From positions 51,026,001 to 51,090,000 of the forward strand of contig OZ287749.1 of the NCBI GenBank assembly GCA_965649765.1: a stretch of 64,000 nt of DNA, in the 5' to 3' direction. The DNA comes from Bispira polyomma. Lineage: Eukaryota. Within the stretch, counting starts at the first letter, position 1, and every line of letters starts with the position of its first letter. The translations under genes and the position numbers were made by a program. Under the pieces are notes generated by a model. That model was not told the DNA's origin. It worked only from the letters and a program-made list of their open reading frames with translations, and did not search any database. This document shows, piece by piece, positions 3,423 to 54,382 of the stretch.

Positions 3423-3784
3423 GGATTATTATTATTGTTTTGTCGGACTCTTTTCAAAAGTTGTGTCATAAATTCACATTGAGGTTTGAGTCTGCTATAT
3501 CTTCAAATTTGCCTGAAATTACGTCAGTTAGAACTTTAAACTTTGCTGACTACAGTGGATCTTTTTGCAATATTGACTATAATTTTTGGCAATTCCAAAT
3601 CGCACAAAATAATGCCAAAGATTATGTTTTGCAATTCCAAATATCCAAATATATTTAGGTACAATCATCAAGTGCGAATATAACACTGTATTTTAGGAAA
3701 AACTTTGGTGTGTATCAACACATACAAAAGTAGTTACTCCAGATGTTACATCTCAAATAATGCCCTAGATGTTTTGTGTTCTAA

Positions 3785-4859
3785 GCTCGGTTAGCTCAGT
3801 CGGTAGAGCATCAGACTTTTGAGAAAATGAGCTTTAAGTGATCTCAGGATCAAAGGTTTGAGTCCCTTATAGGGCGAAAGCTTTTACACTGATTGATGTC
3901 AGCCCTATTTAACACACAATCTACTACAAAGACATTGGAACTGTTGTTGTGTCATGAATTCATGTTGAGATATCAGTCAGTTTTCTCCATTCCAGCCATC
4001 TTGAAGCAGATAGCAAAATCTCTTTACTTTAGTTTAAACTTTGCTGACTACAGTGGATCTTTTGCAATTCCAAATATCCAAATATATTTAGGTACAATCA
4101 TCAAGTGTGAATGTAACACTGTATTTTAGCAAATGCATTGGTGGGTATCAACACATGCAAAAGTAGTTACTCCAGACAGTGGCCTGTGAAGTGTGAATAT
4201 AACACTGTATTTTAGCAAACACATTGGTGGGCATCAACACATACAAAAGTAGTTACTTTAGATGTTACATCTCAAATAATGCCAAAGATGATATGTGTTC
4301 TAAGCCTGCTTAGCTCAGTTGGTAGAGCATTAGACTTTTTTAAGACAATGGCCTGGCAGTGATTGGAAGGTCAAGGGTTCATGTCCCTTATAGGGCGAAA
4401 GCTTTTACACTGATTGATGTCAGCCCTATTTAACACACAATCAACTACAAAGACATTGGACCTGTTGTTGTGTCATGAATTCATGTTGAGATATCAGTCA
4501 ATTTTCATCATTCTAGTCATCTTGAACGAGATAGCAAAATCTCTTTACTTTAGTTTAAACTTTGCTGACTAAAGTGGATCTTTTGCAATATTGACTATAA
4601 TTTTTTGCAATTCCAAATATCCACATATATTTATATTAAGGTACAATCATCAAGTGTGAATGTGACACTGTAATTTAGCAAACGCATTGGTGGGCATCAA
4701 CACATGCAAAAGTAGTCACTGCAGATGTTACATCTCAAATAATGCCAAAGATTGTTTGTGTTCTAAGCTGGGCTAGCTCAGTCGGTAGAGCATCAGCCCT
4801 TTTAAGACAATGGCCTTGAAGTGATCTGAGGGTCAAGGTTTCGAGTCTTGTTTTGTGCG
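3785..4859 (+). pseudogene. Three degenerate tRNA-Lys pseudogenes at the left array edge (3785-3876, 4304-4397, 4767-4859)
   Basis: Recognisable A box, anticodon arm, intron and B box, with multiple stem-breaking substitutions and indels. Confidence 0.85.
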
Positions 4860-6065
4860 ACACGTTTTACACTGATTGATAACAGCCCTACTCGACACAT
4901 AATCAACTACAACGACATTTAAAGTGTTGTTGTGTCATAAATTCATTTAGAGATATCAGTCAGTTTTATCCATTCCAGCCATCATTGAAGAGATAGCAAA
5001 GTCTCTTTACTTTAATTGAAACTTTGCTGACTACAGTGGATCTTTTTGCAATATTGACTACAATTTTTTGCAAATTCCAAATATCCAAATATATTTAGGT
5101 ACAGCCCTACTTAACACATAATCAGCTGCAAAGACATTGGAACTGTTGGAGCTGTGTCATCAATTCATGATAAGATATTAGTCACTTTTCTCCATTACAG
5201 CCATCTTTGAAGAGATACCAAAGTCTCTTTAGTTTTGTTGAAACTTTCCTGACTACAGTGGATCTTTTTGCAATATTCACTATCATTCAGCCATCATTGA
5301 AGAGATAGCAAAGTCTCTTTACTTTAATTGAAACTTTGCTGACTACAGTGGATCTTTTTGCAATATTGACTACAATTTTTTGCAAATTCCAAATATCCAA
5401 ATATATTTAGGTACAGGTTTTTGCAATATTGGAACTGTTGGAGCTGTGTCATCAATTCATGATAAGATATTAGTCACTTTTCTCCATTACAGCCATCTTT
5501 GAAGAGATACCAAAGTCTCTTTAGTTTTGTTGAAACTTTCCTGACTACAGTGGATCTTTTTGCAATATTCACTATAATTTTTCGCAATTCCATATCACAC
5601 AAAAGAATGCTCTAGATGTTTTGAGTTCAAAGCCCGGTTAGCTCTGTCGGTAGAGCATCAGACTTTTAAGACAATAACCTTGAAGTGATCTGAGGGTCAA
5701 GGGTTCGAGTCCCTTATTGGGCGAAAGATTTTACACTGATTGATGACAGCCCTACCCAACACACAATCAGCTGCAAAGACATTGCAACTGTTGTTGTTGT
5801 GTCATAAATTCATGTTAAGATATCAGTCACTATTCTCCATTACAGCCATCTTTAAAGAGATACCAAAGTCTCTCGTTTTGTTGAAACTTTGCTGACTACA
5901 GTGGATCTTTTGCAATTCCAAATATCCAAATATATTTAGGTACAATCATCAAGTGTGAATATAACACTGTATTTTAGGAAACATATCAGTGGGCATCAAC
6001 ACATACAAAAGTAGTTACTCCAGATGTCACATCTCAAATAATTCCCTAGAAGATTTCTCTTATAA

Positions 6066-6157
6066 GCCTGGTTAGCTCAGTTGGTAGACCATCAGACTTT
6101 TAAGACAATTGCCTTGAAGTGATCTGAAGGTCAAGGGTTTGAGTCCCCTTTTGGGTG
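6066..6157 (+). pseudogene. B2-class tRNA-Lys pseudogene (representative; others start at 12533, 14068, 15146, 26832, 29003, 31174, 32252, 34423, 36594, 37672, 40262, 45457, 46969)
   Basis: G24C breaks the D stem, C56T hits the B box, T64C and A66T break T-stem and acceptor-stem pairs; also C4T, C17T and C72T. Confidence 0.85.
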
Positions 6158-6425
6158 AAAGCTTTTACAATTATTGATGTCAGCCCCACTTAACACACAA
6201 TCAACAACAAAGACATTGGAACTGTTGTTGTGTCATGAATTCATGTTGAGATATCAGTCAATTATCTCCATTCCAGCCATCTGTAAGGAGGATACAGTGG
6301 ATCTTTTTGCAATATTGACTACAATTTTTTGCAATTCCAAATATCCAAATATATTTAGGTACAATCATCAAGTGTGAATGTAACACCGTATTTTAGCAAA
6401 TGCTTTGGTGGGTATCAAAACATTT

Positions 6426-6448
6426 GGGTTCGAGTCCCTTATTGGATG
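6426..6448 (+). pseudogene. C-class fragment: isolated tRNA 3' end with intact B box (representative of about 41 copies)
   Basis: gggttcgagtcccttattggatg corresponds to tRNA positions 51-73, fused directly to spacer ...gtatcaaaacattt; no 5' exon or intron. Confidence 0.9.
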
Positions 6449-7143
6449 AAAGGTTTCACAATTATTGATGACAGCCCTACTTAACACATAATCAGCTGCA
6501 AAGACATTGGAAACTGTTTGAGCTGTGTCATCAATTCATGATGAGATATTAGTCACTTTTCTCCATTACAGCCATCTTTGAAGAGATACCAAAGTCTCTT
6601 TAGTTTTGTTGAAACTTTCCTGACTACAGTGGATCTTTTTGCAATATTCACTATAATTTTTCGCAATTCCATATCACACAAAAGAATGCTCTAGATGTTT
6701 TGTCTTCAAAGCCCGGTTAGCTCAGTCGATAGAGCATCAGACTTTTAAGACAATAACCTTGAAGTGATCTGAGGGTCAAGGGTTCGAGTCCCTTATTGGG
6801 CGAAAGCTTTTACACTGATTGATGACAGCCCTACCTAACACATAATCAGCTGCAAAGACATTGCAACTGTTGTTGTTGTGTCATAAATTCATGTTAAGAT
6901 ATCAGTCGCTATTCTCCATTACAGCCATCTTTAAAGAGATACCAAAGTCTCTTGTTTTGTTGAAACTTTGCTGACTACAGTGGATCTTTTGCAATTCCAA
7001 ATATCCAAATATATTTAGGTACAATCATCAAGTGTGAATATAACACTGTATTTTAGCAAACACATCAGTGGGCATCAACACATACAAAGTCGTTACTCCA
7101 GATGTCACATCTCAAATAATGCCCTAGATGATTTTGCTTATAA

Positions 7144-7235
7144 GCCCGGTTAGCTCAGTCGGTAGAGCATCAGACTTTTAAGACAATTGCCTTGAAGTGA
7201 TATGAAGGTCAAGGGTTCGAGTCCCCTTTTGGGTG
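7144..7235 (+). pseudogene. B1-class tRNA-Lys probable pseudogene (representative; others start at 8223, 9300, 10377, 11456, 12989, 15602, 16681, 17760, 19499, 21234, 22973)
   Basis: A and B boxes retained, but C40A breaks the anticodon stem and ccccttttgggtg or cccgttttgggtg disrupts the T and acceptor stems and creates an internal T4 run. Confidence 0.8.
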
Positions 7236-10200
7236 AAAGCTTTTACAATTATTGATGTCAGCCCCACTTAACACACAATCAACAACAAAGACATTGGAAC
7301 TGTTGTTGTGTCATGAATTCATGTTGAGATATCAGTCAATTATTTCCATTCCAGCCATCTGTAAGGAGGATACAGTGGATCTTTTTGCAATATTGACTAC
7401 AATTTTTTGCAATTCCAAATATCCAAATATATTTAGGTACAATCATCAAGTGTGAATGTAACACCGTATTTTAGCAAATGCTTTGGTGGGTATCAAAACA
7501 TTTGGGTTCGAGTCCCTTATTGGATGAAAGGTTTCACAATTATTGATGACAGCCCTACTTAACACATAATCAGCTGCAAAGACATTGGAAACTGTTTGAG
7601 CTGTGTCATCAATTCATGATAAGATATTAGTCACTTTTCTCCATTACAGCCATCTTTGAAGAGATACCAAAGTCTCTTTAGTTTTGTTGAAACTTTCCTG
7701 ACTACAGTGGATCTTTTTGCCATATTCACTATAATTTTTCGCAATTCCATAACACACAAAAGAATGCTCTAGATGTTTTGTGTTCAAAGCCCGGTTAGCT
7801 CAGTCAATAGAGCATCAGACTTTTAAGACAATAACCTTGAAGTGATCTGAGGGTCAAGGGTTCGAGTCCCTTATTGGGAGAAAGCTTTTACACTGATTGA
7901 TGACAGCCCTACCTAACACATAATCAGCTGCAAAGACATTGCAACTGTTGTTGTTGTGTCATAAATTCATGTTAAGATATCAGTCGCTATTCTCCATTAC
8001 AGCCATCTTTAAAGAGATACCAAAGTCTCTTGTTTTGTTGAAACTTTGCTGACTACAGTGGATCTTTTGCAATTCCAAATATCCAAATATATTTAGGTAC
8101 AATCATCAAGTGTGAATATAACACTGTATTTTAGCAAACACATCAGTGGGCATCAACACATACAAAAGTCGTTACTCCAGATGTTACATCTCAAATAATG
8201 CCCTAGATGATTTTGCTTATAAGCCGGGTTAGCTCAGTCGGTAGAGCATCAGACTTTTAAGACAATTGCCTTGAAGTGATATGAAGGTCAAGGGTTCGAG
8301 TCCCCTTTTGGGTGAAAGCTTTTACAATTATTGATGTCAGCCCCACTTAACACACAATCAACAACAAAGACATTGGAACTGTTGTTGTGTCATGAATTCA
8401 TGTTGAGATATCAGTCAATTATTTCCATTCCAGCCATCTGTAAGGAGGATACAGTGGATCTTTTTGCAATATTGACTACAATTTTTTGCAATTCCAAATA
8501 TCCAAATATATTTAGGTACAATCATCAAGTGTGAATGTAACACCGTATTTTAGCAAATGCTTTGGTGGGTATCAAAACATTTGGGTTCGAGTCCCTTATT
8601 GGATGAAAGGTTTCACAATTATTGATGACAGCCCTACTTAACACATAATCAGCTGCAAAGACATTGGAAACTGTTTGAGCTGTGTCATCAATTCATGATA
8701 AGATATTAGTCACTTTTCTCCATTACAGCCATCTTTGAAGAGATACCAAAGTCTCTTTAGTTTTGTTGAAACTTTCCTGACTACAGTGGATCTTTTTGCC
8801 ATATTCACTATAATTTTTCGCAATTCCATAACACACAAAAGAATGCTCTAGATGTTTTGTGTTCAAAGCCAGGTTAGCTCAGTCGGTAGAGCATCAGACT
8901 TTTAAGACAATAACCTTGAAGTGATCTGAGGGTCAAGGGTTCGAGTCCCTTATTGGGCGAAAGCTTTTACACTGATTGATGAGCCCTACCTAACACATAA
9001 TCAGCTGCAAAGACATTGCAACTGTTGTTGTTGTGTCATAAATTCATGTTAAGATATCAGTCGCTATTCTCCATTACAGCCATCTTTAAAGAGATACCAA
9101 AGTCTCTTGTTTTGTTGAAACTTTGCTGACTACAGTGGATCTTTTGCAATTCCAAATATCCAAATATATTTAGGTACAATCATCAAGTGTGAATATAACA
9201 CTGTATTTTAGCAAACACATCAGTGGGCATCAACACATACAAAAGTCGTTACTCCAGATGTTACATCTCAAATAATGCCCTAGATGATTTTGCTTATAAG
9301 CCGGGTTAGCTCAGTCGGTAGAGCATCAGACTTTTAAGACAATTGCCTTGAAGTGATATGAAGGTCAAGGGTTCGAGTCCCCTTTTGGGTGAAAGCTTTT
9401 ACAATTATTGATGTCAGCCCCACTTAACACACAATCAACAACAAAGACATTGGAACTGTTGTTGTGTCATGAATTCATGTTGAGATATCAGTCAATTATT
9501 TCCATTCCAGCCATCTGTAAGGAGGATACAGTGGATCTTTTTGCAATATTGACTACAATTTTTTGCAATTCCAAATATCCAAATATATTTAGGTACAATC
9601 ATCAAGTGTGAATGTAACACCGTATTTTAGCAAATGCTTTGGTGGGTATCAAAACATTTGGGTTCGAGTCCCTTATTGGATGAAAGGTTTCACAATTATT
9701 GATGACAGCCCTACTTAACACATAATCAGCTGCAAAGACATTGGAAACTGTTTGAGCTGTGTCATCAATTCATGATAAGATATTAGTCACTTTTCTCCAT
9801 TACAGCCATCTTTGAAGAGATACCAAAGTCTCTTTAGTTTTGTTGAAACTTTCCTGACTACAGTGGATCTTTTTGCCATATTCACTATAATTTTTCGCAA
9901 TTCCATAACACACAAAAGAATGCTCTAGATGTTTTGTGTTCAAAGCCAGGTTAGCTCAGTCGATAGAGCATCAGACTTTTAAGACAATAACCTTGAAGTG
10001 ATCTGAGGGTCAAGGGTTCGAGTCCCTTATTGGGCGAAAGCTTTTACACTGATTGATGAGCCCTACCTAACACATAATCAGCTGCAAAGACATTGCAACT
10101 GTTGTTGTTGTGTCATAAATTCATGTTAAGATATCAGTCGCTATTCTCCATTACAGCCATCTTTAAAGAGATACCAAAGTCTCTTGTTTTGTTGAAACTT

Positions 10201-12100
10201 TGCTGACTACAGTGGATCTTTTGCAATTCCAAATATCCAAATATATTTAGGTACAATCATCAAGTGTGAATATAACACTGTATTTTAGCAAACACATCAG
10301 TGGGCATCAACACATACAAAAGTCGTTACTCCAGATGTTACATCTCAAATAATGCCCTAGATGATTTTGCTTATAAGCCGGGTTAGCTCAGTCGGTAGAG
10401 CATCAGACTTTTAAGACAATTGCCTTGAAGTGATATGAAGGTCAAGGGTTCGAGTCCCCTTTTGGGTGAAAGCTTTTACAATTATTGATGTCAGCCCCAC
10501 TTAACACACAATCAACAACAAAGACATTGGAACTGTTGTTGTGTCATGAATTCATGTTGAGATATCAGTCAATTATTTCCATTCCAGCCATCTGTAAGGA
10601 GGATACAGTGGATCTTTTTGCAATATTGACTACAATTTTTTGCAATTCCAAATATCCAAATATATTTAGGTACAATCATCAAGTGTGAATGTAACACCGT
10701 ATTTTAGCAAATGCTTTGGTGGGTATCAAAACATTTGGGTTCGAGTCCCTTATTGGATGAAAGGTTTCACAATTATTGATGACAGCCCTACTTAACACAT
10801 AATCAGCTGCAAAGACATTGGAAACTGTTTGAGCTGTGTCATCAATTCATGATAAGATATTAGTCACTTTTCTCCATTACAGCCATCTTTGAAGAGATAC
10901 CAAAGTCTCTTTAGTTTTGTTGAAACTTTCCTGACTACAGTGGATCTTTTTGCCATATTCACTATAATTTTTCGCAATTCCATAACACACAAAAGAATGC
11001 TCTAGATGTTTTGTGTTCAAAGCCTGGTTAGCTCAGTCGATAGAGCATCAGACTTTTAAGACAATAACCTTGAAGTGATCTGAGGGTCAAGGGTTCGAGT
11101 CCCTTATTGGGAGAAAGTTTTTACACTGATTGATGACAGCCCTACCTAACACATAATCAGCTGCAAAGACATTGCAACTGTTGTTGTTGTGTCATAAATT
11201 CATGTTAAGATATCAGTCGCTATTCTCCATTACAGCCATCTTTAAAGAGATACCAAAGTCTCTTGTTTTGTTGAAACTTTGCTGACTACAGTGGATCTTT
11301 TGCAATTCCAAATATCCAAATATATTTAGGTACAATCATCAAGTGTGAATATAACACTGTATTTTAGCAAACACATCAGTGGGCATCAACACATACAAAA
11401 GTCGTTACTCCAGATGTTACATCTCAAATAATGCCCTAGATGATTTTGCTTATAAGCCGGGTTAGCTCAGTCGGTAGAGCATCAGACTTTTAAGACAATT
11501 GCCTTGAAGTGATATGAAGGTCAAGGGTTCGAGTCCCCTTTTGGGTGAAAGCTTTTACAATTATTGATGTCAGCCCCACTTAACACACAATCAACAACAA
11601 AGACATTGGAACTGTTGTTGTGTCATGAATTCATGTTGAGATATCAGTCAATTATCTCCATTCCAGCCATCTGTAAGGAGGATACAGTGGATCTTTTTGC
11701 AATATTGACTACAATTTTTTGCAATTCCAAATATCCAAATATATTTAGGTACAATCATCAAGTGTGAATGTAACACCGTATTTTAGCAAATGCTTTGGTG
11801 GGTATCAAAACATTTGGGTTCGAGTCCCTTATTGGATGAAAGGTTTCACAATTATTGATGACAGCCCTACTTAACACATAATCAGCTGCAAAGACATTGG
11901 AAACTGTTTGAGCTGTGTCATCAATTCATGATAAGATATTAGTCACTTTTCTCCATTACAGCCATCTTTGAAGAGATACCAAAGTCTCTTTAGTTTTGTT
12001 GAAACTTTCCTGACTACAGTGGATCTTTTTGCAATATTCACTATAATTTTTCGCAATTCCATATCACACAAAAGAATGCTCTAGATGTTTTGTGTTCAAA

Positions 12101-12192
12101 GCCTGGTTAGCTCAGTCGGTAGAGCATCAGACTTTTAAGACAATAACCTTGAAGTGATCTGAGGGTCAAGGGTTCGAGTCCCTTATTGGGCG
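12101..12192 (+). tRNA. trnK-UUU: tRNA-Lys(UUU), 19-nt intron, T4 variant
   Basis: Consensus gene except C4T (extra G:U pair in acceptor stem); intact A and B boxes and T4 terminator. Confidence 0.7.
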
Positions 12193-13633
12193 AAAGCTTT
12201 TACACTGATTGATGAGCCCTACCTAACACATAATCAGCTGCAAAGACATTGCAACTGTTGTTGTTGTGTCATAAATTCATGTTAAGATATCAGTCGCTAT
12301 TCTCCATTACAGCCATCTTTAAAGAGATACCAAAGTCTCTTGTTTTGTTGAAACTTTGCTGACTACAGTGGATCTTTTGCAATTCCAAATATCCAAATAT
12401 ATTTAGGTACAATCATCAAGTGTGAATATAACACTGTATTTTAGCAAACACATCAGTGGGCATCAACACATACAAAAGTCGTTACTCCAGATGTTACATC
12501 TCAAATAATTCCCTAGAAGATTTCTCTTATAAGCCTGGTTAGCTCAGTTGGTAGACCATCAGACTTTTAAGACAATTGCCTTGAAGTGATCTGAAGGTCA
12601 AGGGTTTGAGTCCCCTTTTGGGTGAAAGCTTTTACAATTATTGATGTCAGCCCCACTTAACACACAATCAACAACAAAGACATTGGAACTGTTGTTGTGT
12701 CATGAATTCATGTTGAGATATCAGTCAATTATCTCCATTCCAGCCATCTGTAAGGAGGATACAGTGGATCTTTTTGCAATATTGACTAAAGTCTCTTGTT
12801 TTGTTGAAACTTTGCTGACTACAGTGGATCTTTTGCAATTCCAAATATCCAAATATATTTAGGTACAATCATCAAGTGTGAATATAACACTGTATTTTAG
12901 CAAACACATCAGTGGGCATCAACACATACAAAAGTCGTTACTCCAGATGTTACATCTCAAATAATTCCCTAGATGATTTTGCTAATAAGCCCGGTTAGTT
13001 CAGTCGGTAGAGCATCAGACTTTTAAGACAATTGCCTTGAAGTGATATGAAGGTCAAGGGTTCGAGTCCCCTTTTGGGTGAAAGCTTTTACAATTATTGA
13101 TGTCAGCCCCACTTAACACACAATCAACAACAAAGACATTGGAACTGTTGTTGTGTCATGAATTCATGTTGAGATATCAGTCAATTATTTCCATTCCAGC
13201 CATCTGTAAGGAGGATACAGTGGATCTTTTTGCAATATTGACTACAATTTTTTGCAATTCCAAATATCCAAATATATTTAGGTACAATCATCAAGTGTGA
13301 ATGTAACACCGTATTTTAGCAAATGCTTTGGTGGGTATCAAAACATTTGGGTTCGAGTCCCTTATTGGATGAAAGGTTTCACAATTATTGATGACAGCCC
13401 TACTTAACACATAATCAGCTGCAAAGACATTGGAAACTGTTTGAGCTGTGTCATCAATTCATGATAAGATATTAGTCACTTTTCTCCATTACAGCCATCT
13501 TTGAAGAGATACCAAAGTCTCTTTAGTTTTGTTGAAACTTTCCTGACTACAGTGGATCTTTTTGCAATATTCACTATAATTTTTCGCAATTCCATATCAC
13601 ACAAAAGAATGCTCTAGATGTTTTGTGTTCAAA

Positions 13634-13725
13634 GCCCGGTTAGCTCAGTTGGTAGAGCATCAGACTTTTAAGACAATAACCTTGAAGTGATCTGAGGGTC
13701 AAGGGTTCGAGTCCCTTATTGGGCG
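13634..13725 (+). tRNA. trnK-UUU: tRNA-Lys(UUU), 19-nt intron
   Basis: All four stems pair; only D-loop C17T differs from the array consensus. Confidence 0.88.
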
Positions 13726-16246: not shown

Positions 16247-16338
16247 GCCCGGTTAGCTCAGTCGGTAGAGCATCAGACTTTTAAGACAATAACCTTGAAG
16301 TGATCTGAGGGTCAAGGGTTCGAGTCCCTTATTGGGCG
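16247..16338 (+). tRNA. trnK-UUU: tRNA-Lys(UUU), 19-nt intron at 16284-16302 (array consensus copy)
   Basis: GCCCGGTTAGCTCAGTCGGTAGAGCATCAGACTTTTA/agacaataaccttgaagtg/ATCTGAGGGTCAAGGGTTCGAGTCCCTTATTGGGCG. The spliced 73-nt product folds into a full cloverleaf with anticodon TTT and discriminator G73, and closely matches eukaryotic tRNA-Lys3. Confidence 0.92.
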
Positions 16339-16343
16339 AAAGC

Positions 16344-16347
16344 TTTT
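16344..16347 (+). terminator. Pol III T4 terminator (representative; aaagctttt follows nearly every full copy)
   Basis: TTTT begins 6 nt after G73. Confidence 0.7.
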
Positions 16348-24323: not shown

Positions 24324-24328
24324 TCAAA

Positions 24329-41339: not shown

Positions 41340-41431
41340 GCCTGGTTAGCTCAGTCGGTAGAGCATCAGACTTTTAAGACAATAACCTTGAAGTGATCTG
41401 AGGGTCAAGGGTTCGAATCCCTTATTGGGCG
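41340..41431 (+). tRNA. trnK-UUU: tRNA-Lys(UUU), intron, T4/A59 variant
   Basis: Stems pair; boxes intact. Confidence 0.72.
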
Positions 41432-44400
41432 AAAGCTTTTACACTGATTGATGACAGCCCTACCTAGCACAGAATCAGCTGCAAAGACATTGCAACTGTT
41501 GTTGTTGTGTCATAAATTCATGTTAAGATATCAGTCACTATTCTCCATTACAGCCATCTTTAAAGAGATACCAAAGTCTCTTGTTTTGTTGAAACTTTGC
41601 TGACTACAGTGGATCTTTTGCAATTCCAAATATCCAAATATATTTAGGTACAATCATCAAGTGTGAATACAACAGTGTATTTTAGCAAACACATCAGTGG
41701 GCATCAACACATACAAAAGTAGTTACTCCAGATGTTACATCTCAAATAATGCCCTAGATGATTACTCTTCTAAGCCCGGTTAGCTCAGTCGGTAGAGCAT
41801 CAGACTTTTAAGACGATTGCTTTGAAGTGATCTGAAGGTCAAAGTTTCGAGTTCCCTTTTGGGTGAAAGCTTTTACAATTATTGATGTCAGCCCCACTTA
41901 ACACACAATCAACAACAAAGACATTGGAACTGTTGTTGTGTCATGAATTCATGTTGAGATATCAGTCAATTATCTCCATTCCAGCCATCTGTAAGGAGGA
42001 TACAGTGGATCTTTTTGCAATATTGACTACAATTTTTTGCAATTCCAAATATCCAAATATATTTAGGTACAATCATCAAGTGTGAATGTAACACCGTATT
42101 TTAACAAATACTTTGGTGGGTATCAAAACATTTGGGTTCGAGTCCCTTGTTGGATGAAAGGTTTCACAATTATTGATGACAGCCCTACTTAACACATAAT
42201 CAGCTGCAAAGACATTGGAACTGTTTAAGCTGTGTCATCAATTCATGATAAGATATTAGTCACTTTTCTGCATTACAGCCATCTTTGAAGAGATACCAAA
42301 GTCTCTTTAGTTTTGTTGAAACTTTCCTGACTACAGTGGATCTTTTTGCAATATTCACTATAATTTTTCGCAATTCCATATCACACAAAAGAATGCTCTA
42401 GATGTTTTGTGTTCAAAGCCCGGTTAGCTCAGTCGGTAGAGCATCAGACTTTTAAGACAATAACCTTGAAGTGATCTGAGGGTCAAGGGTTTGAATACCT
42501 TATTGGGTGAAAGCTTTTACACTGATTGATGACAGCCCTACCTAACACAGAATCAGCTGCAAAGACATTGCAACTGTTGTTGTTGTGTCATAAATTCATG
42601 TTAAGATATCAGTCACTATTCTCCATTACAGCCATCTTTAAAGAGATACCAAAGTCTCTTGTTTTGTTGAAACTTTGCTGACTACAGTGGATCTTTTGCA
42701 ATTCCAAATATCCAAATATATTTAGGTACAATCATCAAGTGTGAATACAACAGTGTATTTTAGCAAACACATCAGTGGGCATCAACACATACAAAAGTAG
42801 TTACTCCAGATGTTACATCTCAAATAATGCCCTAGATGATTACTCTTCTAAGCCCGGTTAGCTCAGTCGGTAGAGCATCAGACTTTTAAGACGATTGCTT
42901 TGAAGTGATCTGAAGGTCAAAGTTTCGAGTTCCCTTTTGGGTGAAAGCTTTTACAATTATTGATGTCAGCCCCACTTAACACACAATCAACAACAAAGAC
43001 ATTGGAACTGTTGTTGTGTCATGAATTCATGTTGAGATATCAGTCAATTATCTCCATTCCAGCCATCTGTAAGGAGGATACAGTGGATCTTTTTGCAATA
43101 TTGACTACAATTTTTTGCAATTCCAAATATCCAAATATATTTAGGTACAATCATCAAGTGTGAATGTAACACCGTATTTTAACAAATACTTTGGTGGGTA
43201 TCAAAACATTTGGGTTCGAGTCCCTTGTTGGATGAAAGGTTTCACAATTATTGATGACAGCCCTACTTAACACATAATCAGCTGCAAAGACATTGGAACT
43301 GTTTAAGCTGTGTCATCAATTCATGATAAGATATTAGTCACTTTTCTCCATTACAGCCATCTTTGAAGAGATACCAAAGTCTCTTTAGTTTTGTTGAAAC
43401 TTTCCTGACTACAGTGGATCTTTTTGCAATATTCACTATAATTTTTCGCAATTCCATATCACACAAAAGAATGCTCTAGATGTTTTGTGTTCAAAGCCCG
43501 GTTAGCTCAGTCGGTAGAGCATCAGACTTTTAAGACAATAACCTTGAAGTGATCTGAGGGTCAAGGGTTTGAATACCTTATTGGGTGAAAGCTTTTACAC
43601 TGATTGATGACAGCCCTACCTAACACAGAATCAGCTGCAAAGACATTGCAACTGTTGTTGTTGTGTCATAAATTCATGTTAAGATATCAGTCACTATTCT
43701 CCATTACAGCCATCTTTAAAGAGATACCAAAGTCTCTTGTTTTGTTGAAACTTTGCTGACTACAGTGGATCTTTTGCAATTCCAAATATCCAAATATATT
43801 TAGGTACAATCATCAAGTGTGAATATAACACTGTATTTTAGCAAACACATCAGTGGGCATCAACACATACAAAAGTAGTTACTCCAGATGTTACATCTCA
43901 AATAATGCCCTAGATGATTTCTCTTCTAAGCCTGGTTAGCTCAGTCGGTAGAGCATCAGACTTTTAAGACAATAACCTTGAAGTGATCTGAGTGTCAAGG
44001 GTTCAAATCCATTATTGGGCAAAAGCTTTTACACTGATTGATGACAGCCCTACCTAACACATAATCAGCTGCAAAGACATTGCAACTGTTGTTGTTGTGT
44101 CATAAATTCATGTTAAGATATCAGTCACTATTCTCCATTACAGCCATCTTTAAAGAGATACCAAAGTCTCTTGTTTTGTTGAAACTTTGCTGACTACAGT
44201 GGATCTTTTGCAATTCCAAATATCCAAATATATTTAGGTACAATCATCAAGTGTGAATATAACACTGTATTTTAGCAAACACATCAGTGGGCATCAACAC
44301 ATACAAAAGTAGTTACTCCAGATGTTACATCTCAAATAATGCCCTAGATGATTTTGCTTATAAGCCCGGTTAGCTCAGTCGGTAGAGCATCAGACTTTTA

Positions 44401-47400
44401 AGACAATAACCTTGAAGTGATATGAGGGTCAAGGGTTCGAATACCTTATTGGGTGAAAGCTTTTACACTGGTTGATGACAGCCCTACCTAACACATAATC
44501 AGCTGCAAAGACATTGCAACTGTTGTTGTTGTGTCATAAATTCATGTTAAGATATCAGTCACTATTCTCCATTACAGCCATCTTTAAAGAGATACCAAAG
44601 TCTCTTGTTTTGTTGAAACTTTGCTGACTACAGTGGATCTTTTGCAATTCCAAATATCCAAATATATTTAGGTACAATCATCAAGTGTGAATATAACACT
44701 GTATTTTAGCAAATGCTTTGGTGGGTATCAAAACATTTGGGTTCGAGTCCCTTATTGGATGAAAGGTTTCACAATTATTGATGACAGCCCTACTTAACAT
44801 ATAATCAGCTGCAAAGACATTGGAACTGTTTGAGCCGTGTCATCAATTCATGATAAGATATTAGTCACTTTTCTCCATTACAGCCATCTTTGAAGAGATA
44901 CCAAAGTCTCTTTAGTTTTGTTGAAACTTTCCTGACTACAGTGGATCTTTTTGCAATATTCACTATAATTTTTCGCAATTCCATATCACACAAAAGAATG
45001 CTCTAGATGTTTTGAGTTCAAAGCCTGGTTAGCTCAGTTGGTAGCGCATCAGACTTTTAAGACAATAACCTTGAAGTGATCTGAGGTTCAAGGGTTCGAG
45101 TCCCTTATTGGGCTAAAGCTTTTACACTGATTGATGCCAGCCCTACCTAACACATAATCAGCTGCAAAGACATTGCAACTGTTGTTGTTGTGTCATAAAT
45201 TCATGTTAAGATATCAGTCACTATTCTCCATTACAGCCATCTTTAAAGAGATACCAAAGTCTCTTGTTTTGTTGAAACTTTGCTGACTACAGTGGATCTT
45301 TTGCAATTCCAAATATCCAAATATATTTAGGTACAATCATCAAGTGTGAATATAACACTGTATTTTAGGAAACATATCAGTGGGCATCAACACATACAAA
45401 AGTAGTTACTCCAGATGTCACATCTCAAATAATTCCCTAGAAGATTTCTCTTATAAGCCTGGTTAGCTCAGTTGGTAGACCATCAGACTTTTAAGACAAT
45501 TGCCTTGAAGTGATCTGAAGGTCAAGGGTTTGAGTCCCCTTTTGGGTGAAAGCTTTTACAATTATTGATGTCAGCCCCACTTAACACACAATCAACAACA
45601 AAGACATTGGAACTGTTGTTGTGTCATGAATTCATGTTGAGATATCAGTCAATTATTTCCATTCCAGCCATCTGTAAAGAGGATACAGTGGATCTTTTTG
45701 CAATATTGACTACAATTTTTTGCAATTCCAAATATCCAAATATATTTAGGTACAATCATCAGGTGTGAATGTAACACCGTATTTTAGCAAATGCTTTGGT
45801 GGGTATCAAAACATTTGGGTTCGAGTCCCTTATTGGATGAAAGGTTTCACAATTATTGATGACAGCCCTACTTAACACATAATCAGCTGCAAAGACATTG
45901 GAACTGTTTAAGCTGTGTCATCAATTCATGATAAGATATTAGTCACTTTTCTCCATTACAGCCATCTTTGAAGAGATACCAAAGTCTCTTTAGTTTTGTT
46001 GAAACTTTCCTGACTACAATGGATCTTTTTGCAATATTCACTATAATTTTTCGCAATTCCATATCACACAAAAAAATGCTCTAGAAGTGTTGTGTTCAAA
46101 GCCGGGTTAGCTCAGTCGGTAGAGCATCAGACTTTTAAGACAATAACCTTGAAGTGATCTGAGGGTCAAGGGTTCGAGTCCCTTATTGGGCGAAAGCTTT
46201 TACACTGATTGATGACAGCCCTACCTAACACAGAATCAGCTGCAAAGACATTGCAACTGTTGTTGTTGTGTCATAAATTCATGTTAAGATATCAGTCACT
46301 ATTCTCCATTACAGCCATCTTTAAAGAGATACCAAAGTCTCTTGTTTTGTTGAAACTTTGCTGACTACAGTGGATCTTTTGCAATTCCAAATATCCAAAT
46401 ATATTTAGGTACAATCATCAAGTGTGAATATAACACTGTATTTTAGCAAACACATCAGTGGGCATCAACACAGACAAAAGTAGTTACTCCAGATGTTACA
46501 TCTCAAATAATGCCCTAGATGATTTCTGTTCCAAGCCTGGTTAGCTCAGTCAGTAGAGCATCAGACTTTTAAGACAATAACCTTGAAGTGATCTGAGGGT
46601 CAAGGGTTCGAATCCCTTATTGGGCGAAAGCTTTTACACTGATTGATGACAGCCCTACCTAGCACAGAATCAGCTGCAAAGACATTGCAACTGTTGTTGT
46701 TGTGTCATAAATTCATGTTAAGATATCAGTCACTATTCTCCATTACAGCCATCTTTAAAGAGATACCAAAGTCTCTTGTTTTGTTGAAACTTTGCTGACT
46801 ACAGTGGATCTTTTGCAATTCCAAATATCCAAATATATTTAGGTACAATCATCAAGTGTGAATATAACACTGTATTTTAGGAAACATATCAGTGGGCATC
46901 AACACATACAAAAGTAGTTACTCCAGATGTCACATCTCAAATAATTCCCTAGAAGATTTCTCTTATAAGCCTGGTTAGCTCAGTTGGTAGACCATCAGAC
47001 TTTTAAGACAATTGCCTTGAAGTGATCTGAAGGTCAAGGGTTTGAGTCCCCTTTTGGGTGAAAGCTTTTACAATTATTGATGTCAGCCCCACTTAACACA
47101 CAATCAACAACAAAGACATTGGAACTGTTGTTGTGTCATGAATTCATGTTGAGATATCAGTCAATTATTTCCATTCCAGCCATCTGTAAGGAGGATACAG
47201 TGGATCTTTTTGCAATATTGACTACAATTTTTTGCAATTCCAAATATCCAAATATATTTAGGTACAATCATCAGGTGTGAATGTAACACCGTATTTTAGC
47301 AAATGCTTTGGTGGGTATCAAAACATTTGGGTTCGAGTCCCTTATTGGATGAAAGGTTTCACAATTATTGATGACAGCCCTACTTAACACATAATCAGCT

Positions 47401-47612
47401 GCAAAGACATTGGAACTGTTTAAGCTGTGTCATCAATTCATGATAAGATATTAGTCACTTTTCTCCATTACAGCCATCTTTGAAGAGATACCAAAGTCTC
47501 TTTAGTTTTGTTGAAACTTTCCTGACTACAATGGATCTTTTTGCAATATTCACTATAATTTTTCGCAATTCCATATCACACAAAAAAATGCTCTAGAAGT
47601 TTTGTGTTCAAA

Positions 47613-47704
47613 GCCCGGTTAGCTCAGTCGGTAGAGCATCAGACTTTTAAGACAATAACCTTGAAGTGATCTGAGGGTCAAGGGTTCGAGTCCCTTATTG
47701 GGCG
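47613..47704 (+). tRNA. trnK-UUU: tRNA-Lys(UUU), 19-nt intron
   Basis: Identical to consensus. Confidence 0.9.
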
Positions 47705-48046
47705 AAAGCTTTTACACTGATTGATGACAGCCCTACCTAACACAGAATCAGCTGCAAAGACATTGCAACTGTTGTTGTTGTGTCATAAATTCATGTTAAG
47801 ATATCAGTCACTATTCTCCATTACAGCCATCTTTAAAGAGATACCAAAGTCTCTTGTTTTGTTGAAACTTTGCTGACTACAGTGGATCTTTTGCAATTCC
47901 AAATATCCAAATATATTTAGGTACAATCATCAAGTGTGAATATAACACTGTATTTTAGCAAACACATCAGTGGGCATCAACACAGACAAAAGTAGTTACT
48001 CCAGATGTTACATCTCAAATAATGCCCTAGATGATTTCTGTTCCAA

Positions 48047-48138
48047 GCCTGGTTAGCTCAGTCGGTAGAGCATCAGACTTTTAAGACAATAACCTTGAAG
48101 TGATCTGAGGGTCAAGGGTTCAAATCCCTTATTGGGCG
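48047..48138 (+). tRNA. trnK-UUU: tRNA-Lys(UUU), intron, T4/A57/A59 variant
   Basis: Stems pair; B box GGTTCAAATCC still fits the consensus. Confidence 0.68.
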
Positions 48139-49992
48139 AAAGCTTTTACACTGATTGATGACAGCCCTACCTAGCACAGAATCAGCTGCAAAGACATTGC
48201 AACTGTTGTTGTTGTGTCATAAATTCATGTTAAGATATCAGTCACTATTCTCCATTACAGCCATCTTTAAAGAGATACCAAAGTCTCTTGTTTTGTTGAA
48301 ACTTTGCTGACTACAGTGGATCTTTTGCAATTCCAAATATCCAAATATATTTAGGTACAATCATCAAGTGTGAATACAACAGTGTATTTTAGCAAACACA
48401 TCAGTGGGCATCAACACATACAAAAGTAGTTACTCCAGATGTTACATCTCAAATAATGCCCTAGATGATTACTCTTCTAAGCCCGGTTAGCTCAGTCGGT
48501 AGAGCATCAGACTATTAAGACGATTGCTTTGAAGTGATCTGAAGGTCAAAGTTTCGAGTTCCCTTTTGGGTGAAAGCTTTTACAATTATTGATGTCAGCC
48601 CCACTTAACACACAATCAACAACAAAGACATTGGAACTGTTGTTGTGTCATGAATTCATGTTGAGATATCAGTCAATTATCTCCATTCCAGCCATCTGTA
48701 AGGAGGATACAGTGGATCTTTTTGCAATATTGACTACAATTTTTTGCAATTCCAAATATCCAAATATATTTAGGTACAATCATCAAGTGTGAATGTAACA
48801 CCGTATTTTAACAAATACTTTGGTGGGTATCAAAACATTTGGGTTCGAGTCCCTTGTTGGATGAAAGGTTTCACAATTATTGATGACAGCCCTACCTAAC
48901 ACATAATCAGCTGCAAAGACATTGGAACTGTTTAAGCTGTGTCATCAATTCATGATAAGATATTAGTCACTTTTCTCCATTACAGCCATCTTTGAAGAGA
49001 TACCAAAGTCTCTTTAGTTTTGTTGAAACTTTCCTGACTACAGTGGATCTTTTTGCAATATTCACTATAATTTTTCGCAATTCCATATCACACAAAAGAA
49101 TGCTCTAGATGTTTTGTGTTCAAAGCCAGGTTAGCTCAGTCGGTAGAGCATCAGACTTTTAAGACAATAACCTTGAAGTGATCTGAGGGTCAAGGGTTTG
49201 AATACCTTATTGGGTGAAAGCTTTTACACTGATTGATGACAGCCCTACCTAACACAGAATCAGCTGCAAAGACATTGCAACTGTTGTTGTTGTGTCATAA
49301 ATTCATGTTAAGATATCAGTCACTATTCTCCATTACAGCCATCTTTAAAGAGATACCAAAGTCTCTTGTTTTGTTGAAACTTTGCTGACTACAGTGGATC
49401 TTTTGCAATTCCAAATATCCAAATATATTTAGGTACAATCATCAAGTGTGAATATAACACTGTATTTTAGCAAACACATCAGTGGGCATCAACACATACA
49501 AAAGTAGTTACTCCAGATGTTACATCTCAAATAATGCCCTAGATGATTTCTCTTCTAAGCCTGGTTAGCTCAGTCGGTAGAGCATCAGACTTTTAAGACA
49601 ATAACCTTGAAGTGATCTGAGTGTCAAGGGTTCAAATCCATTATTGGGCGAAAGCTTTTACACTGATTGATGACAGCCCTACCTAACACATAATCAGCTG
49701 CAAAGACATTGCAACTGTTGTTGTTGTGTCATAAATTCATGTTAAGATATCAGTCACTATTCTCCATTACAGCCATCTTTAAAGAGATACCAAAGTCTCT
49801 TGTTTTGTTGAAACTTTGCTGACTACAGTGGATCTTTTGCAATTCCAAATATCCAAATATATTTAGGTACAATCATCAAGTGTGAATATAACACTGTATT
49901 TTAGCAAACACATCAGTGGGCATCAACACAGACAAAAGTAGTTACTCCAGATGTTACATCTCAAATAATGCCCTAGATGATTTCTGTTCCAA

Positions 49993-50084
49993 GCCTGGTT
50001 AGCTCAGTCGGTAGAGCATCAGACTTTTAAGACAATAACCTTGAAGTGATCTGAGGGTCAAGGGTTCGAATCCCTTATTGGGCG
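49993..50084 (+). tRNA. trnK-UUU: tRNA-Lys(UUU), intron, T4/A59 variant
   Basis: Stems pair; boxes intact. Confidence 0.72.
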
Positions 50085-51496
50085 AAAGCTTTTACACTGA
50101 TTGATGACAGCCCTACCTAGCACAGAATCAGCTGCAAAGACATTGCAACTGTTGTTGTTGTGTCATAAATTCATGTTAAGATATCAGTCACTATTCTCCA
50201 TTACAGCCATCTTTAAAGAGATACCAAAGTCTCTTGTTTTGTTGAAACTTTGCTGACTACAGTGGATCTTTTGCAATTCCAAATATCCAAATATATTTAG
50301 GTACAATCATCAAGTGTGAATACAACAGTGTATTTTAGCAAACACATCAGTGGGCATCAACACATACAAAAGTAGTTACTCCAGATGTTACATCTTAAAT
50401 AATGCCCTAGATGATTACTCTTCTAAGCCCGGTTAGCTCAGTCGGTAGAGCATCAGACTATTAAGACGATTGCTTTGAAGTGATCTGAAGGTCAAAGTTT
50501 CGAGTTCCCTTTTGGGTGAAAGCTTTTACAATTATTGATGTCAGCCCCACTTAACACACAATCAACAACAAAGACATTGGAACTGTTGTTGTGTCATGAA
50601 TTCATGTTGAGATATCAGTCAATTATCTCCATTCCAGCCATCTGTAAGGAGGATACAGTGGATCTTTTTGCAATATTGACTACAATTTTTTGCAATTCCA
50701 AATATCCAAATATATTTAGGTACAATCATCAAGTGTGAATGTAACACCGTATTTTAACAAATACTTTGGTGGGTATCAAAACATTTGGGTTCGAGTCCCT
50801 TGTTGGATGAAAGGTTTCACAATTATTGATGACAGCCCTACCTAACACATAATCAGCTGCAAAGACATTGGAACTGTTTAAGCTGTGTCATCAATTCATG
50901 ATAAGATATTAGTCACTTTTCTCCATTACAGCCATCTTTGAAGAGATACCAAAGTCTCTTTAGTTTTGTTGAAACTTTCCTGACTACAGTGGATCTTTTT
51001 GCAATATTCACTATAATTTTTCGCAATTCCATATCACACAAAAGAATGCTCTAGATGTTTTGTGTTCAAAGCCAGGTTAGCTCAGTCGGTAGAGCATCAG
51101 ACTTTTAAGACAATAACCTTGAAGTGATCTGAGGGTCAAGGGTTTGAATACCTTATTGGGTGAAAGCTTTTACACTGATTGATGACAGCCCTACCTAACA
51201 CAGAATCAGCTGCAAAGACATTGCAACTGTTGTTGTTGTGTCATAAATTCATGTTAAGATATCAGTCACTATTCTCCATTACAGCCATCTTTAAAGAGAT
51301 ACCAAAGTCTCTTGTTTTGTTGAAACTTTGCTGACTACAGTGGATCTTTTGCAATTCCAAATATCCAAATATATTTAGGTACAATCATCAAGTGTGAATA
51401 TAACACTGTATTTTAGCAAACACATCAGTGGGCATCAACACATACAAAAGTAGTTACTCCAGATGTTACATCTCAAATAATGCCCTAGATGATCTC

Positions 51497-54048
51497 TCCA
51501 GGTTAGCTCAGTCGGTAGAGCATCAGACTTTTAAGACAATAACCTTGAAGTGATCTGAGGGTCAAGGGTTGGAGTCACTTATTGGGCGAAAGCTTTTACA
51601 CTGATTGATGACAGCCCTACCTAACACATAATTAGCTGCAAAGACATTGCAACTGTTGTTGTTGTGTCATAAATTCATGTTAAGATATCAGTCACTATTC
51701 TCCATTACAGCCATCTTTAAAGAGATACCAAAGTCTCTTGTTTTGTTGAAACTTTGCTGACTACAGTGGATCTTTTGCAATTCCAAATATCCAAATATAT
51801 TTAGGTACAATCATCAAGTGTGAATATAACACTGTATTTTAGCAAACACATCAGTGGGCGTCAACACATACAAAAGTAGTTACTCCAGATGTTACATCTT
51901 AAATAATGCCCTAGATGATTTCTTTTCTATGCTCGGTTACCTCAGTAGGTAGAGCATCAGACTTTTAGTACAATTGTCTTGAAGTGATCGGAGGGTCAAG
52001 GGTTCGAGTCCCCTATTGGGTGAAAGCTTTTACAATTATTGATGTCAGCCCTACTTAACACACAATCAACAACAAAGACATTGGAACTGTTGTTGTGTCA
52101 TGATTTCATGTTGAGATATCAGTCAATTATCTCCATTCCAGCCATCTGTAAGGAGGATACAGTGGATCTTTTTGCAATATTGACTACAATTTTTTGCAAT
52201 TCTAAATATCCAAATATATTTAGGTACAATCATCAAGTGTGAATGTAACACCGTATTTTAGCAAATGCATTGGTGGGTATCAAAACATTTGGGTTCAAGT
52301 CCCTTATTGGATGAAAGGTTTCACAATTATTGATGACAGCCCTACTTAACACATAATCAGCTGCAAAGACATTGGAACTGTTTGAGCTATGTCATCATTT
52401 CATGATAAGATATTAGTCACTTTTCTCCATTACAGCCATCTTTGAAGAGATACCAAAGTCTCTTTAGTTTTGTTGAAACTTTCCTGACTACAGTGGATCT
52501 TTTTGCAATATTCACTATAATTTTTCGCAATTCCATATCACACAAAAGAATGCTCTAGATTTTTTGTGTTCAAAGCCCGGTTAGCTCAGACTTTTAAGAC
52601 AATAACCTTGAACTGATCTGAGAGTCAATGGTTGGAGTCCCTTATTGGGTGAAAGCTTTTACACTGATTGATGACAGCCGTACCTAACAGATAATCAGCT
52701 GCAAAGACATTGCAACTGTTGTTGTTGTGTCATAAATTCATGTTAAGATATCAGTCACTATTCTCCATTACAGCCATCTTTAAAGAGATACCAAAGTCTC
52801 TTGTTTTGTTGAAACTTTGCTGACTACAGTGGATCTTTTGCAATTCCAAATATCCAAATATATTTAGGTACAATCATCAAGTGTGAATATAACACTGTAT
52901 TTTAGCAAACACATCAGTGGGCATCAACACATACAAAAGTAGTTACTCCAGATGTTACATCTCAAATAATGCCCTAGATGATTTTTCTTCTAAGCCCGGT
53001 TAGCTCATTCGGTAGAGCATCAGACTTTTAAGACAATTGCCTTGAAGTGATCTGAAGGTCAAGGGTTCGAGTTCCTTATTGGGTGAAAGGTTTCACACGT
53101 ATTGATGACAGCCCTGCTTAACACATAATCAGCTACAAAGACATTGGAACTGCTGTTGTTGTGTCATCAATTGATGTTGAGATATTATTCACTTTCCTCT
53201 ATTACAGCCATCTTTGAAGAGATACCAAAGTCTTTTTTAGTTTGGTTGAAACTTTGCTGACTACAGTGGATCTTTTGCAATATTGACTATAATTTTTACA
53301 ATTCCAAATCACACAAAATAATGCCCTAGATGTTTTGTGTTCTGGTCTAGAGTTTGCAATATTGACTATAATTTTTTGCAATTCCAAATATATTTAGGTA
53401 CAATCATCAAGTGTGACTATAACACTGTATTTTAGCAAACCCATTGGTGGGTATCAACACATGCAAAAGTAGTTACTCCAGATGTTACATCTCAAATAAT
53501 GCCAATGATGATTTGTCTTCTAAGCCCGGTTAGCTCAGTCGGTAGAGCATCAGACTTTTAAAACAATGGCCTTGAAGTGATCTGAGGGTCAAGGGTTTGA
53601 GTCCCGTTTTGTGCGAAAGGTTTTACACTGATTGATAACAGCTCTACTTAACACATAATCAACTACAAAGACATTTCAAGTGTTGTTGTGTCATGAATTC
53701 ATGTTAAGATATCAGTCCGTTTTGTCCATTCCAGCCATCTTTAAGGAGATAGCAAAATCTCTTTACTTTAGTTTAAACTTTGCTGACTACAGTGAATCTT
53801 TTGCAATTCCAAATATTCAAATATATTTATGTACAATCATCAAATGTAAATATGACACTGTATTTTAGCAAACACATTGGTGGGTATTAATACATACAAA
53901 AGTAGTTTCTCCAGAAGTTACATCTCAAATATTGCCCTAGATGTTTTGTGTTCAAAGTCTGGTTAGCTCAGTTGGTAGAACATCAGACTTTTAAAAAAAT
54001 GCCTCTGAAGTGATCTGAGGGTCAAGGGTTCGAGTCCCTTATTGGGCA
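51497..54048 (+). pseudogene. Degenerate tRNA-Lys copies at the right array edge (~51497, 51931, 52575, 52994, 53524, 53957)
   Basis: Progressively more substitutions; the 52575-52651 copy lacks 15 bp of the D arm. Confidence 0.85.
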
Positions 54049-54382
54049 GAAGCTTTTACACCGATTGATGACAGACCCACCTCACACATAATCAACTACA
54101 AAGACATTTCAAGTGTTGTTGTGTCATAAATTCATGTCGAGATATTAGTCACTTTTCTCCATTACAGCCATTTTTGAAGAGATAGCAAAGTCTCTTTAGT
54201 TTTGTTGAAACTTTGCTGACTACAGTGGATCTTTTGCAATATTGACTATAATTGTTTGCAATTCCAAATATCTAAATATATTTAGGTACAATCATCAAGT
54301 GTGAATATAACACTGTATTGTAGCAAACACATTGGTGTGTATCAACGCATTCAAAAGTAGTTACTCCAGATGTTACATCTCA

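What the first reader, a model, noticed from the sequence alone, without database searches (positions are those of the whole stretch)
3535..54382. A 51-kb satellite-like array made of a single intron-containing tRNA-Lys(UUU) gene
Seen: about 94 co-oriented 92-bp tRNA-Lys loci plus about 41 fragments in one continuous array with no other isotype; about 22 copies have intact stems, boxes and terminator and are interleaved with defective ones. Known: tandem tRNA arrays exist (Entamoeba tRNA-STR arrays, human 1q23 cluster, Arabidopsis Ser-Tyr-Tyr array). Inference: a single-isotype array behaving as higher-order satellite DNA may be a copy-number-variable Lys(UUU) dosage locus or a Pol III/TFIIIC chromatin domain. 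This is the best candidate for an undescribed system in the window.
Basis: partly seen in the sequence, partly recalled or inferred. Interest (0 to 1): 0.85.

Follow-up and report, generated by a model that had tools for sequence, protein, structure and literature searches.

The report
Tandem lysine-tRNA array, probably germline-transcribed
One ordinary lysine tRNA gene was copied head-to-tail about 94 times; this animal stores many of its tRNA genes in such arrays (a known arrangement), and the pattern of mutations in the copies suggests they are read in the germ line while slowly decaying.

Summary
The array is real: 93 full 92-nt tRNA-Lys(UUU) loci, 2 partial copies and 41 T-arm fragments, all on +, built from a 434-bp unit with higher-order repeats; 28 copies pass an intactness test. 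It is not an undescribed system. The same genome has tandem arrays of Ala(UGC) (also single-isotype), Thr, Ser/Leu and Lys(CUU), and the scan noted Asp, His/Asn and Phe/Arg arrays on other DNA. All six dispersed Lys(UUU) genes, and 40 marine metagenome contigs, carry the same canonical intron. Among recent copies the tRNA is not more conserved than the spacer. It is more variable: new variants concentrate in the gene and the 20 nt upstream, at 3-10 times the spacer rate even without CpG. Fragments lacking the A box show no such excess, and three other arrays repeat the pattern. This matches the published footprint of transcription-associated mutagenesis, which is indirect evidence of germ-line Pol III transcription under relaxed selection. 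The closest known cases are the Xenopus and zebrafish oocyte-type tRNA clusters and the Arabidopsis tRNA arrays. No read-depth or RNA evidence could be obtained.

The parts
3535..54382 (+). Whole tandem array: 434-bp basic monomer (92-nt gene + 342-bp spacer), plus 644-660-bp units that add a ~220-bp truncated monomer; higher-order periods of 1078/1079, 1512, 1739, 2171, 2590 and 3249 bp
27476..27567 (+). Representative intact class-A gene: exon 1 27476-27512, 19-nt intron 27513-27531, exon 2 27532-27567, T4 terminator 5 nt downstream; exons identical to the dispersed genes
5632..51588 (+). Class A monomers (55 copies, spacers about 2% apart; 28 intact, 27 with point defects)
6066..52022 (+). 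Class B monomers (about 30-32 copies, spacer 16% from class A, all structurally defective), carried along in the higher-order repeats
6426..52310 (+). 41 truncated monomers that start at the T arm (B box, no A box); internal control that lacks the mutation excess
3535..5631 (+). Old diverged left edge (copies at 3785, 4304, 4767; 85-91% identical to other units, all defective)
52586..54382 (+). Old diverged right edge (copies at 52586, 52994, 53524, 53957; all defective)
2200..2311 (+). Detached 3'-half remnant of the unit with downstream spacer, separated from the array by a dispersed repeat
55033..55070 (+). Detached exon-1-only remnant beyond the right edge

Best explanation
A tandem tRNA gene array (homocluster) of the animal's only Lys(UUU) gene family. 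SHOWN: a 434-bp monomer carrying a canonical intron-containing gene diverged into an intact lineage (A), a defective lineage (B) and a T-arm fragment (t). Blocks such as A-B-t and A-A-t-A-B-t were then re-amplified as higher-order repeats, with old decayed copies left at both edges. SHOWN: lineage A kept exons identical to the dispersed genes while its flanks drifted about 20%, yet its recent copies mutate faster in the gene and just upstream than in the spacer. INFERRED: the array grows and shrinks by unequal crossing-over. Many copies are loaded by TFIIIC/Pol III and transcribed in the germ line, which mutates them (transcription-associated mutagenesis). Redundancy removes selection on single copies, so intact genes decay and are replaced by re-amplification (birth and death inside a tandem array). 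The intact copies probably add to the Lys(UUU) pool after normal TSEN splicing, but exact copy number is probably loosely constrained.
For: Unit and higher-order map. Intact copies fold as a cloverleaf with the anticodon-intron helix. Class A vs the C4 copy: exons 0/73 differences, intron plus flank 22/96, p=2e-6; edge and B copies carry 4-10 exon changes. Within class A, exon diversity 0.050 vs spacer 0.020; class B 0.060 vs 0.008. Non-CpG variant density relative to distal spacer: -20..-1 is 7-10x, exons 3.4-5.7x. Using only variants shared by at least 2 copies: 10.4x (p=2e-7) and 3.8x (p=5e-4), hot sites at -7 to -15. PMC6130373 reports the peak 10-15 nt upstream of tRNA genes, with flank divergence highest at active loci. 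Fragments without the A box: 3/23 vs 12/167, not significant; full class A 12/23 vs 12/167, p=6e-6. Replication in pooled Ala, Thr and Ser/Leu arrays: inner 5' 3.6x, gene 2.4x, inner 3' 5x; gene CpG 14x but distal CpG 1.7x. Other arrays in the genome.
Against: No RNA or chromatin data. The strict filter that drops alleles seen in other monomer classes reduces the 5'-flank excess to 3.4x, p=0.075 (exons stay at 6.1x and 3.5x), so short gene-conversion tracts may explain part of it. The full-vs-truncated contrast is only p=0.06-0.09. Defective class B shows the excess too. The inner 3' flank excess is absent in this array when only shared variants are counted. Variants were counted as distinct alleles, not as events on a resolved tree.
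Confidence: 0.68

Rival explanations
1. A selected maternal (oocyte-type) dosage locus: arrays supply tRNA for egg stockpiling while the six solitary genes serve the soma, as in Xenopus and zebrafish. This differs from the best explanation only in that copy number and stage-specific switching are under selection.
For: Array-plus-solitary layout for both Lys isoacceptors (28+6 intact UUU; 32 of 36 CUU matches in two clusters). Heritable transcription-like footprint implies germ-line activity. Precedent in 10.1101/869651 and PMC1635290.
Against: No expression data. About two thirds of full loci are defective and were amplified together with intact ones. No purifying signal among recent copies. 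The Arabidopsis array was judged to drift neutrally in copy number (PMC2886086).
Confidence: 0.2
2. A silent tRNA-derived satellite: never transcribed since amplification; the gene-centred variant excess comes from methyl-CpG decay and from conversion or crossover between monomer classes at the gene, their best-matching part.
For: CpG sites are the hottest, 28x among shared variants. The array is CpG-poor (o/e 0.24). Several upstream variants recur across classes.
Against: The excess holds without CpG and for class-private alleles in exons. The same T-arm CpG is nearly invariant in 40 fragments. Distal CpGs in other arrays are not hypermutable, 1/52.
Confidence: 0.15
3. A TFIIIC/Pol III chromatin boundary or domain, in which B boxes (including those of the fragments) matter more than tRNA output.
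For: 41 fragments keep a nearly invariant B box; precedent for tRNA genes as barriers (PMC1635290; PMC4041453).
Against: Fragment B boxes are no more conserved than their spacer. B boxes in full copies mutate freely. No tRNA was seen in 17 kb downstream of the last matched exon in a relative, though synteny there is unresolved.
Confidence: 0.05
4. Assembly expansion of a much shorter array.
For: Exact internal repeats up to 3.5 kb; read depth could not be checked.
Against: No gaps. Every 4-kb word is unique and 81% of 1-kb words are unique. There are 48 gene alleles, and higher-order period changes region by region, which an assembler would not invent.
Confidence: 0.04

Closest known systems
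Arabidopsis tRNA Ser-Tyr-Tyr array and Pro homoclusters (PMC2886086; PMC13578239)
   Same: Dozens of tRNA genes in tandem, intron-containing members, expansion by unequal crossing-over with concerted evolution; homocluster means one isotype.
   Different: Here the monomer is only 434 bp, has three diverged monomer types in higher-order repeats, and about two thirds of loci are defective. The host is an animal, and many isoacceptors are arrayed.
Xenopus oocyte-type tRNA repeats (3.18-kb unit) and zebrafish maternal-type tRNA clusters (PMC1635290; bioRxiv 10.1101/869651)
   Same: Large tandem clusters alongside a few solitary genes of the same anticodon; germ-line activity (shown there, inferred here).
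   Different: The Xenopus unit carries 8 tRNA genes of several isotypes. Oocyte-specific expression is measured there and untested here. The host here is an invertebrate.
Human 1q23.3 tRNA VNTR (PMC4041453)
   Same: Tandemly repeated tRNA genes forming a macrosatellite.
   Different: That unit is 7.3 kb, GC-rich and has a conserved CTCF site; here it is 0.43 kb, 36% GC, one isotype, and copy-number variation is untested.
Other tRNA arrays of this genome: Ala(UGC) C11:11.52 Mb, Thr C3:9.93 Mb, Ser/Leu C3:12.4 Mb, Lys(CUU) C8:47.3-47.4 Mb
   Same: Tandem, short spacers, intact and defective copies interleaved, the same mutation footprint. The Ala array is also single-isotype.
   Different: The Lys(UUU) gene carries an intron, and its unit includes a B-box-only fragment.

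Membership tests
Eukaryotic intron-containing tRNA gene (canonical 37/38) | Short intron between positions 37 and 38 | tested here: met
   19 nt in the array; 19-24 nt in the six dispersed genes; definition in PMC10275265
Eukaryotic intron-containing tRNA gene (canonical 37/38) | Anticodon-intron pair between C32 and the third-last intron base | tested here: met
   G at -3 in the array, in all dispersed genes and in all 33 distinct introns from other animals
Eukaryotic intron-containing tRNA gene (canonical 37/38) | Cloverleaf, A and B boxes, oligo-T terminator | tested here: met
   28 of 93 loci; fold
Eukaryotic intron-containing tRNA gene (canonical 37/38) | Transcribed and spliced in vivo | not testable with these tools
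Tandem tRNA homocluster | At least 5 genes of one isotype within 5 kb, repeated in tandem (PMC13578239) | tested here: met
   About 9 loci per 5 kb over 51 kb, one isotype
Satellite DNA with higher-order repeats | Head-to-tail monomers, multi-monomer periods, homogeneous core with diverged edges | tested here: met
Satellite DNA with higher-order repeats | Heterochromatic or centromeric state | not testable with these tools
   No chromatin data
Oocyte/maternal-type tRNA clusters (Xenopus, zebrafish) | Large cluster plus a few solitary genes of the same anticodon | tested here: met
   Array plus 6 dispersed genes
Oocyte/maternal-type tRNA clusters (Xenopus, zebrafish) | Cluster copies expressed in oocytes and eggs, solitary copies in soma | not testable with these tools
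   Only an indirect germ-line mutation footprint
tRNA-derived SINE | Many dispersed copies with a tRNA-unrelated body; intron lost on retroposition | tested here: not met
   Six dispersed copies, all complete intron-bearing genes; spacer found only in the array and at one C4 locus
Entamoeba tRNA-STR arrays | Short tandem repeats in the spacers; arrays at chromosome ends (from my own knowledge) | tested here: not met
   No STR blocks in the spacer; the array lies at 51 Mb of a 108-Mb contig
Human 1q23.3 tRNA VNTR type | Multi-kb GC-rich unit with a conserved CTCF site | tested here: not met
   434-bp unit at 36% GC; CTCF binding itself untested

The most novel reading that the evidence does not exclude
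This invertebrate has a genome-wide two-tier tRNA gene system: for most anticodons, a germ-line (oocyte-type) tandem array plus a few solitary somatic genes. That would extend the Xenopus/zebrafish dual translation system to a spiralian. The arrays would also record their own transcription as a mutation footprint, with non-transcribable fragments as built-in controls.
Probability: 0.2. Interest if true: 0.65.

Novelty: new member of a known kind. Interest (0 to 1): 0.35.

Why it matters
As a structure it is ordinary: tandem tRNA arrays are known and common in this genome. Its value is as a natural experiment. About 135 near-identical monomers, with and without a complete Pol III promoter, let transcription-associated mutagenesis be read from one haplotype. 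The array-specific intron lets pre-tRNA reads be assigned to the array, so the open question of whether tRNA clusters are adaptive hubs or by-products (stated as unresolved in PMC13578239) can be tested directly in an invertebrate. The Lys(UUU) intron, absent from the human list in PMC10275265, proves widespread in marine animals; I found no paper on it in this library, which does not show it is unreported.

Tried and rejected
ARAGORN isotype calls: rejected as intron misreads. Excess conservation of tRNA over spacer across all copies: none (35/73 vs 117/260 variable sites, p=0.69). Intronless or different Lys(UUU) isodecoders: none found by two exon-1 patterns. The spliced (joined) tRNA was not sent to any search tool; it was formed only inside a local script to score stems, and one search used a pattern that requires a 12-30 nt gap. 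SINE origin: rejected. Synteny in a relative: the solitary intronic Lys(UUU) gene is conserved, but the array site could not be reached with certainty. Naming the 3' gene: no Pfam family, two unnamed homologs. Paper searches found no report of tRNA arrays or a Lys(UUU) intron in molluscs. Organism not identified.
Full report
OBSERVATION. Local BLAST with one copy finds 93 full-length 92-nt loci from 3785 to 53957, all on the + strand; the Rfam tRNA model scores 91 of them above its cut-off. There is also one 5'-deleted copy (52586), one 3'-truncated duplicate (24250) and 41 fragments that start at the T arm. The window has no N. The gene is tRNA-Lys(UUU) with a 19-nt intron after position 37; the intact allele folds as a cloverleaf with the intron paired to the anticodon loop. 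Twenty-eight loci pass a test of four stems, invariant bases, anticodon and T4 terminator; ten of them are identical in their exons to the genome's dispersed genes.

ANATOMY. The basic monomer is 434 bp. Units of 644-660 bp are a monomer followed by a ~220-bp truncated monomer that begins at gene position 70. Spacers define class A (55 copies, about 2% apart, 28 intact), class B (about 30, 16% from A, all defective) and the fragment t. These are repeated as higher-order blocks whose period changes along the array: 1078/1079 bp on the left, 1739 near 18-23 kb, 2171 and 3249 in the centre, 2590 and 1512 on the right. The six outermost copies are 85-91% identical to everything else and are all defective. 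This layered pattern is what repeated unequal crossing-over gives (inference; same model as PMC2886086). An assembly artefact is unlikely: all 4-kb words and 81% of 1-kb words are unique. Read depth could not be checked.

GENOME CONTEXT. The assembly is 1.035 Gb in 75 contigs, and the array lies at 51.03-51.08 Mb of a 108-Mb contig. The organism was not identified. A dispersed element with 147-bp core repeats beside the array (8,536 candidates) resembles those described from bivalves, so a mollusc is my inference. Two exon-1 patterns find only six Lys(UUU) genes outside the window and no other isodecoder. All six have introns of 19-24 nt with different sequences and identical or near-identical exons. 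The array therefore holds 28 of about 34 intact Lys(UUU) genes. One dispersed copy (C4:88.086 Mb) shares spacer on both sides with the array unit at about 80% and looks like an old offshoot of it. Arrays are the norm here: Thr(CGU/UGU), Ala(UGC) and Ser(UGA)/Leu(UAA) arrays appeared in a sample of tRNA hits, and Lys(CUU) has 27 of 36 exact matches in one cluster and 5 in another. The Ala array is also single-isotype, with 360-480-bp spacing and defective copies interleaved. Earlier scan notes report Asp, His/Asn and Phe/Arg arrays (not checked by me).

THE INTRON. The same intron-bearing Lys(UUU) gene occurs in 40 metagenome contigs and in one relative's contig, with 33 distinct introns of 13-25 nt, every one keeping G at the third-last position for the anticodon-intron pair. 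In the related animal the solitary copy just beyond the window's right end (about window position 66.3 kb) is syntenic and has identical exons. The intron is thus an old, splice-competent feature of the gene family, not of the array.

SELECTION. Across all copies the exons are no more conserved than the spacer (p=0.69). On the older timescale they are: class A differs from the C4 copy at 0/73 exon sites but 22/96 intron and flank sites (p=2e-6), while class B and the edge copies carry 4-10 exon changes. The expected number of exon changes on A's own branch is 2-4 and none is seen (P 0.12-0.015), so the A lineage was probably functional until its recent expansion. Conversion from dispersed genes is less likely because the intron is array-specific.

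MUTATION FOOTPRINT. Among recent, nearly identical copies the gene is more variable than the spacer: diversity 0.050 vs 0.020 in A and 0.060 vs 0.008 in B. Binned along the unit and excluding CpG, variant density relative to distal spacer is 7-10x in the 20 nt upstream and 3.4-5.7x in the exons. Counting only variants shared by two or more copies, which removes sequencing errors, gives 10.4x (p=2e-7) and 3.8x (p=5e-4). The hot sites lie at -7 to -15, and no 20-nt distal window has more than 3 variants against 11 upstream. Thornlow et al. (PMC6130373) describe this profile for transcription-associated mutagenesis: a peak 10-15 nt upstream, flank divergence highest at active tRNA genes, and base-change signatures that are not driven by CpG. 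Two controls agree. The fragments, which lack the A box, show no excess in the same T-arm segment (3/23 vs 12/167) where full class A copies do (12/23 vs 12/167; contrast p=0.06-0.09). The pooled Ala, Thr and Ser/Leu arrays independently show inner 5' 3.6x, gene 2.4x, inner 3' 5x and outer flanks near 1x, with CpG hypermutable in genes (14x) but not distally (1.7x). Caveats: a strict filter against cross-class conversion lowers the upstream excess to 3.4x (p=0.075) though exons stay significant; defective class B shows the excess too; alleles, not tree-resolved events, were counted. Since these variants are inherited, the footprint points to germ-line transcription. This is inference; no RNA was seen.

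MECHANISM. The most likely reading is a tandem tRNA homocluster turning over by unequal crossing-over, transcribed at least in the germ line, with intact copies decaying under relaxed selection and being replenished by re-amplification (0.68). Rivals are a selected oocyte-type dosage locus (0.2), a silent satellite (0.15), a chromatin boundary (0.05) and assembly expansion (0.04); the first overlaps with the main reading.

COMPARISON. It is a member of the tandem tRNA homocluster class as defined in PMC13578239. It works most like the Arabidopsis arrays in its turnover. It resembles the Xenopus oocyte repeats and zebrafish maternal-type clusters in the array-plus-solitary layout, but the defining expression pattern is untested, so I do not file it there. 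It is not a SINE, an Entamoeba-type STR array or a 1q23.3-type macrosatellite.

LIMITS. Three DNA runs of one study hold 71-73% of the words of window 52000-58000, and no RNA run was listed. The joined (spliced) tRNA was never used as a search query. In the relative's contig no tRNA lies in 17 kb downstream of the last matched exon, where our array begins after 3.9 kb, but the gene's last exons could not be placed, so lineage-specificity is unproven.

VERDICT. Real, of a known kind, and one of at least five such arrays I verified in this genome. The added value is the mutation footprint and a diagnostic intron that make its expression easy to test. Interest 0.35.

Noticed in passing
window 2400-3350: Dispersed element with about 4 copies of a 147-bp core repeat; 8,536 candidates genome-wide, also present in the relative's contig; resembles bivalve Helentron-type (HINE) or DTC84-like elements. 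It separates the 2200-2311 remnant from the array.
   Followed up: partly
window 55700-61820 (-): 3' part of a protein-coding gene with a 1.6-kb low-complexity exon, ending about 1.3 kb from the array. No Pfam family; two unnamed homologs (52% and 39% identity). The label LAS2 was not confirmed.
   Followed up: partly
L013 2292-2385 (-), about window 66.3 kb: Solitary intact Lys(UUU) gene upstream of the large exon of that gene (probably in an intron), syntenic in a related animal (L039 1674-1765). Its intron is unrelated to the array's, so it is not the array's immediate parent.
   Followed up: yes
L011 4800-5200 and 5813-5877 (C4:88.086 Mb): Intact Lys(UUU) gene flanked on both sides by array-like spacer, plus an exon-1 remnant running into a minisatellite: probable offshoot of an older version of the array.
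   Followed up: partly
window 48481 and 50427; L020 5277-5352; L023-L025: Anticodon-shifted copies inside arrays: two defective Lys copies read AUU; a copy called Lys(UUU) sits in register inside the Thr array; copies called Ala(UGC) in the Ser array are probably Ser(UGA) mutants. Possible mistranslating tRNAs if expressed.
   Followed up: no
L032 2528-2612: An 85-nt tRNA called 'Stop (tta)' by ARAGORN on C12; may be an intron misread or a suppressor-like gene.
   Followed up: no
G000 C8:47.31-47.42 Mb: Lys(CUU) cluster of 27 copies that switches strand in blocks (inversions within the cluster).
   Followed up: no
window array introns: No intron variant among 79 recent core copies (0/76 site-groups) although both exons are hypermutable; not significant against the spacer rate.
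   Followed up: partly
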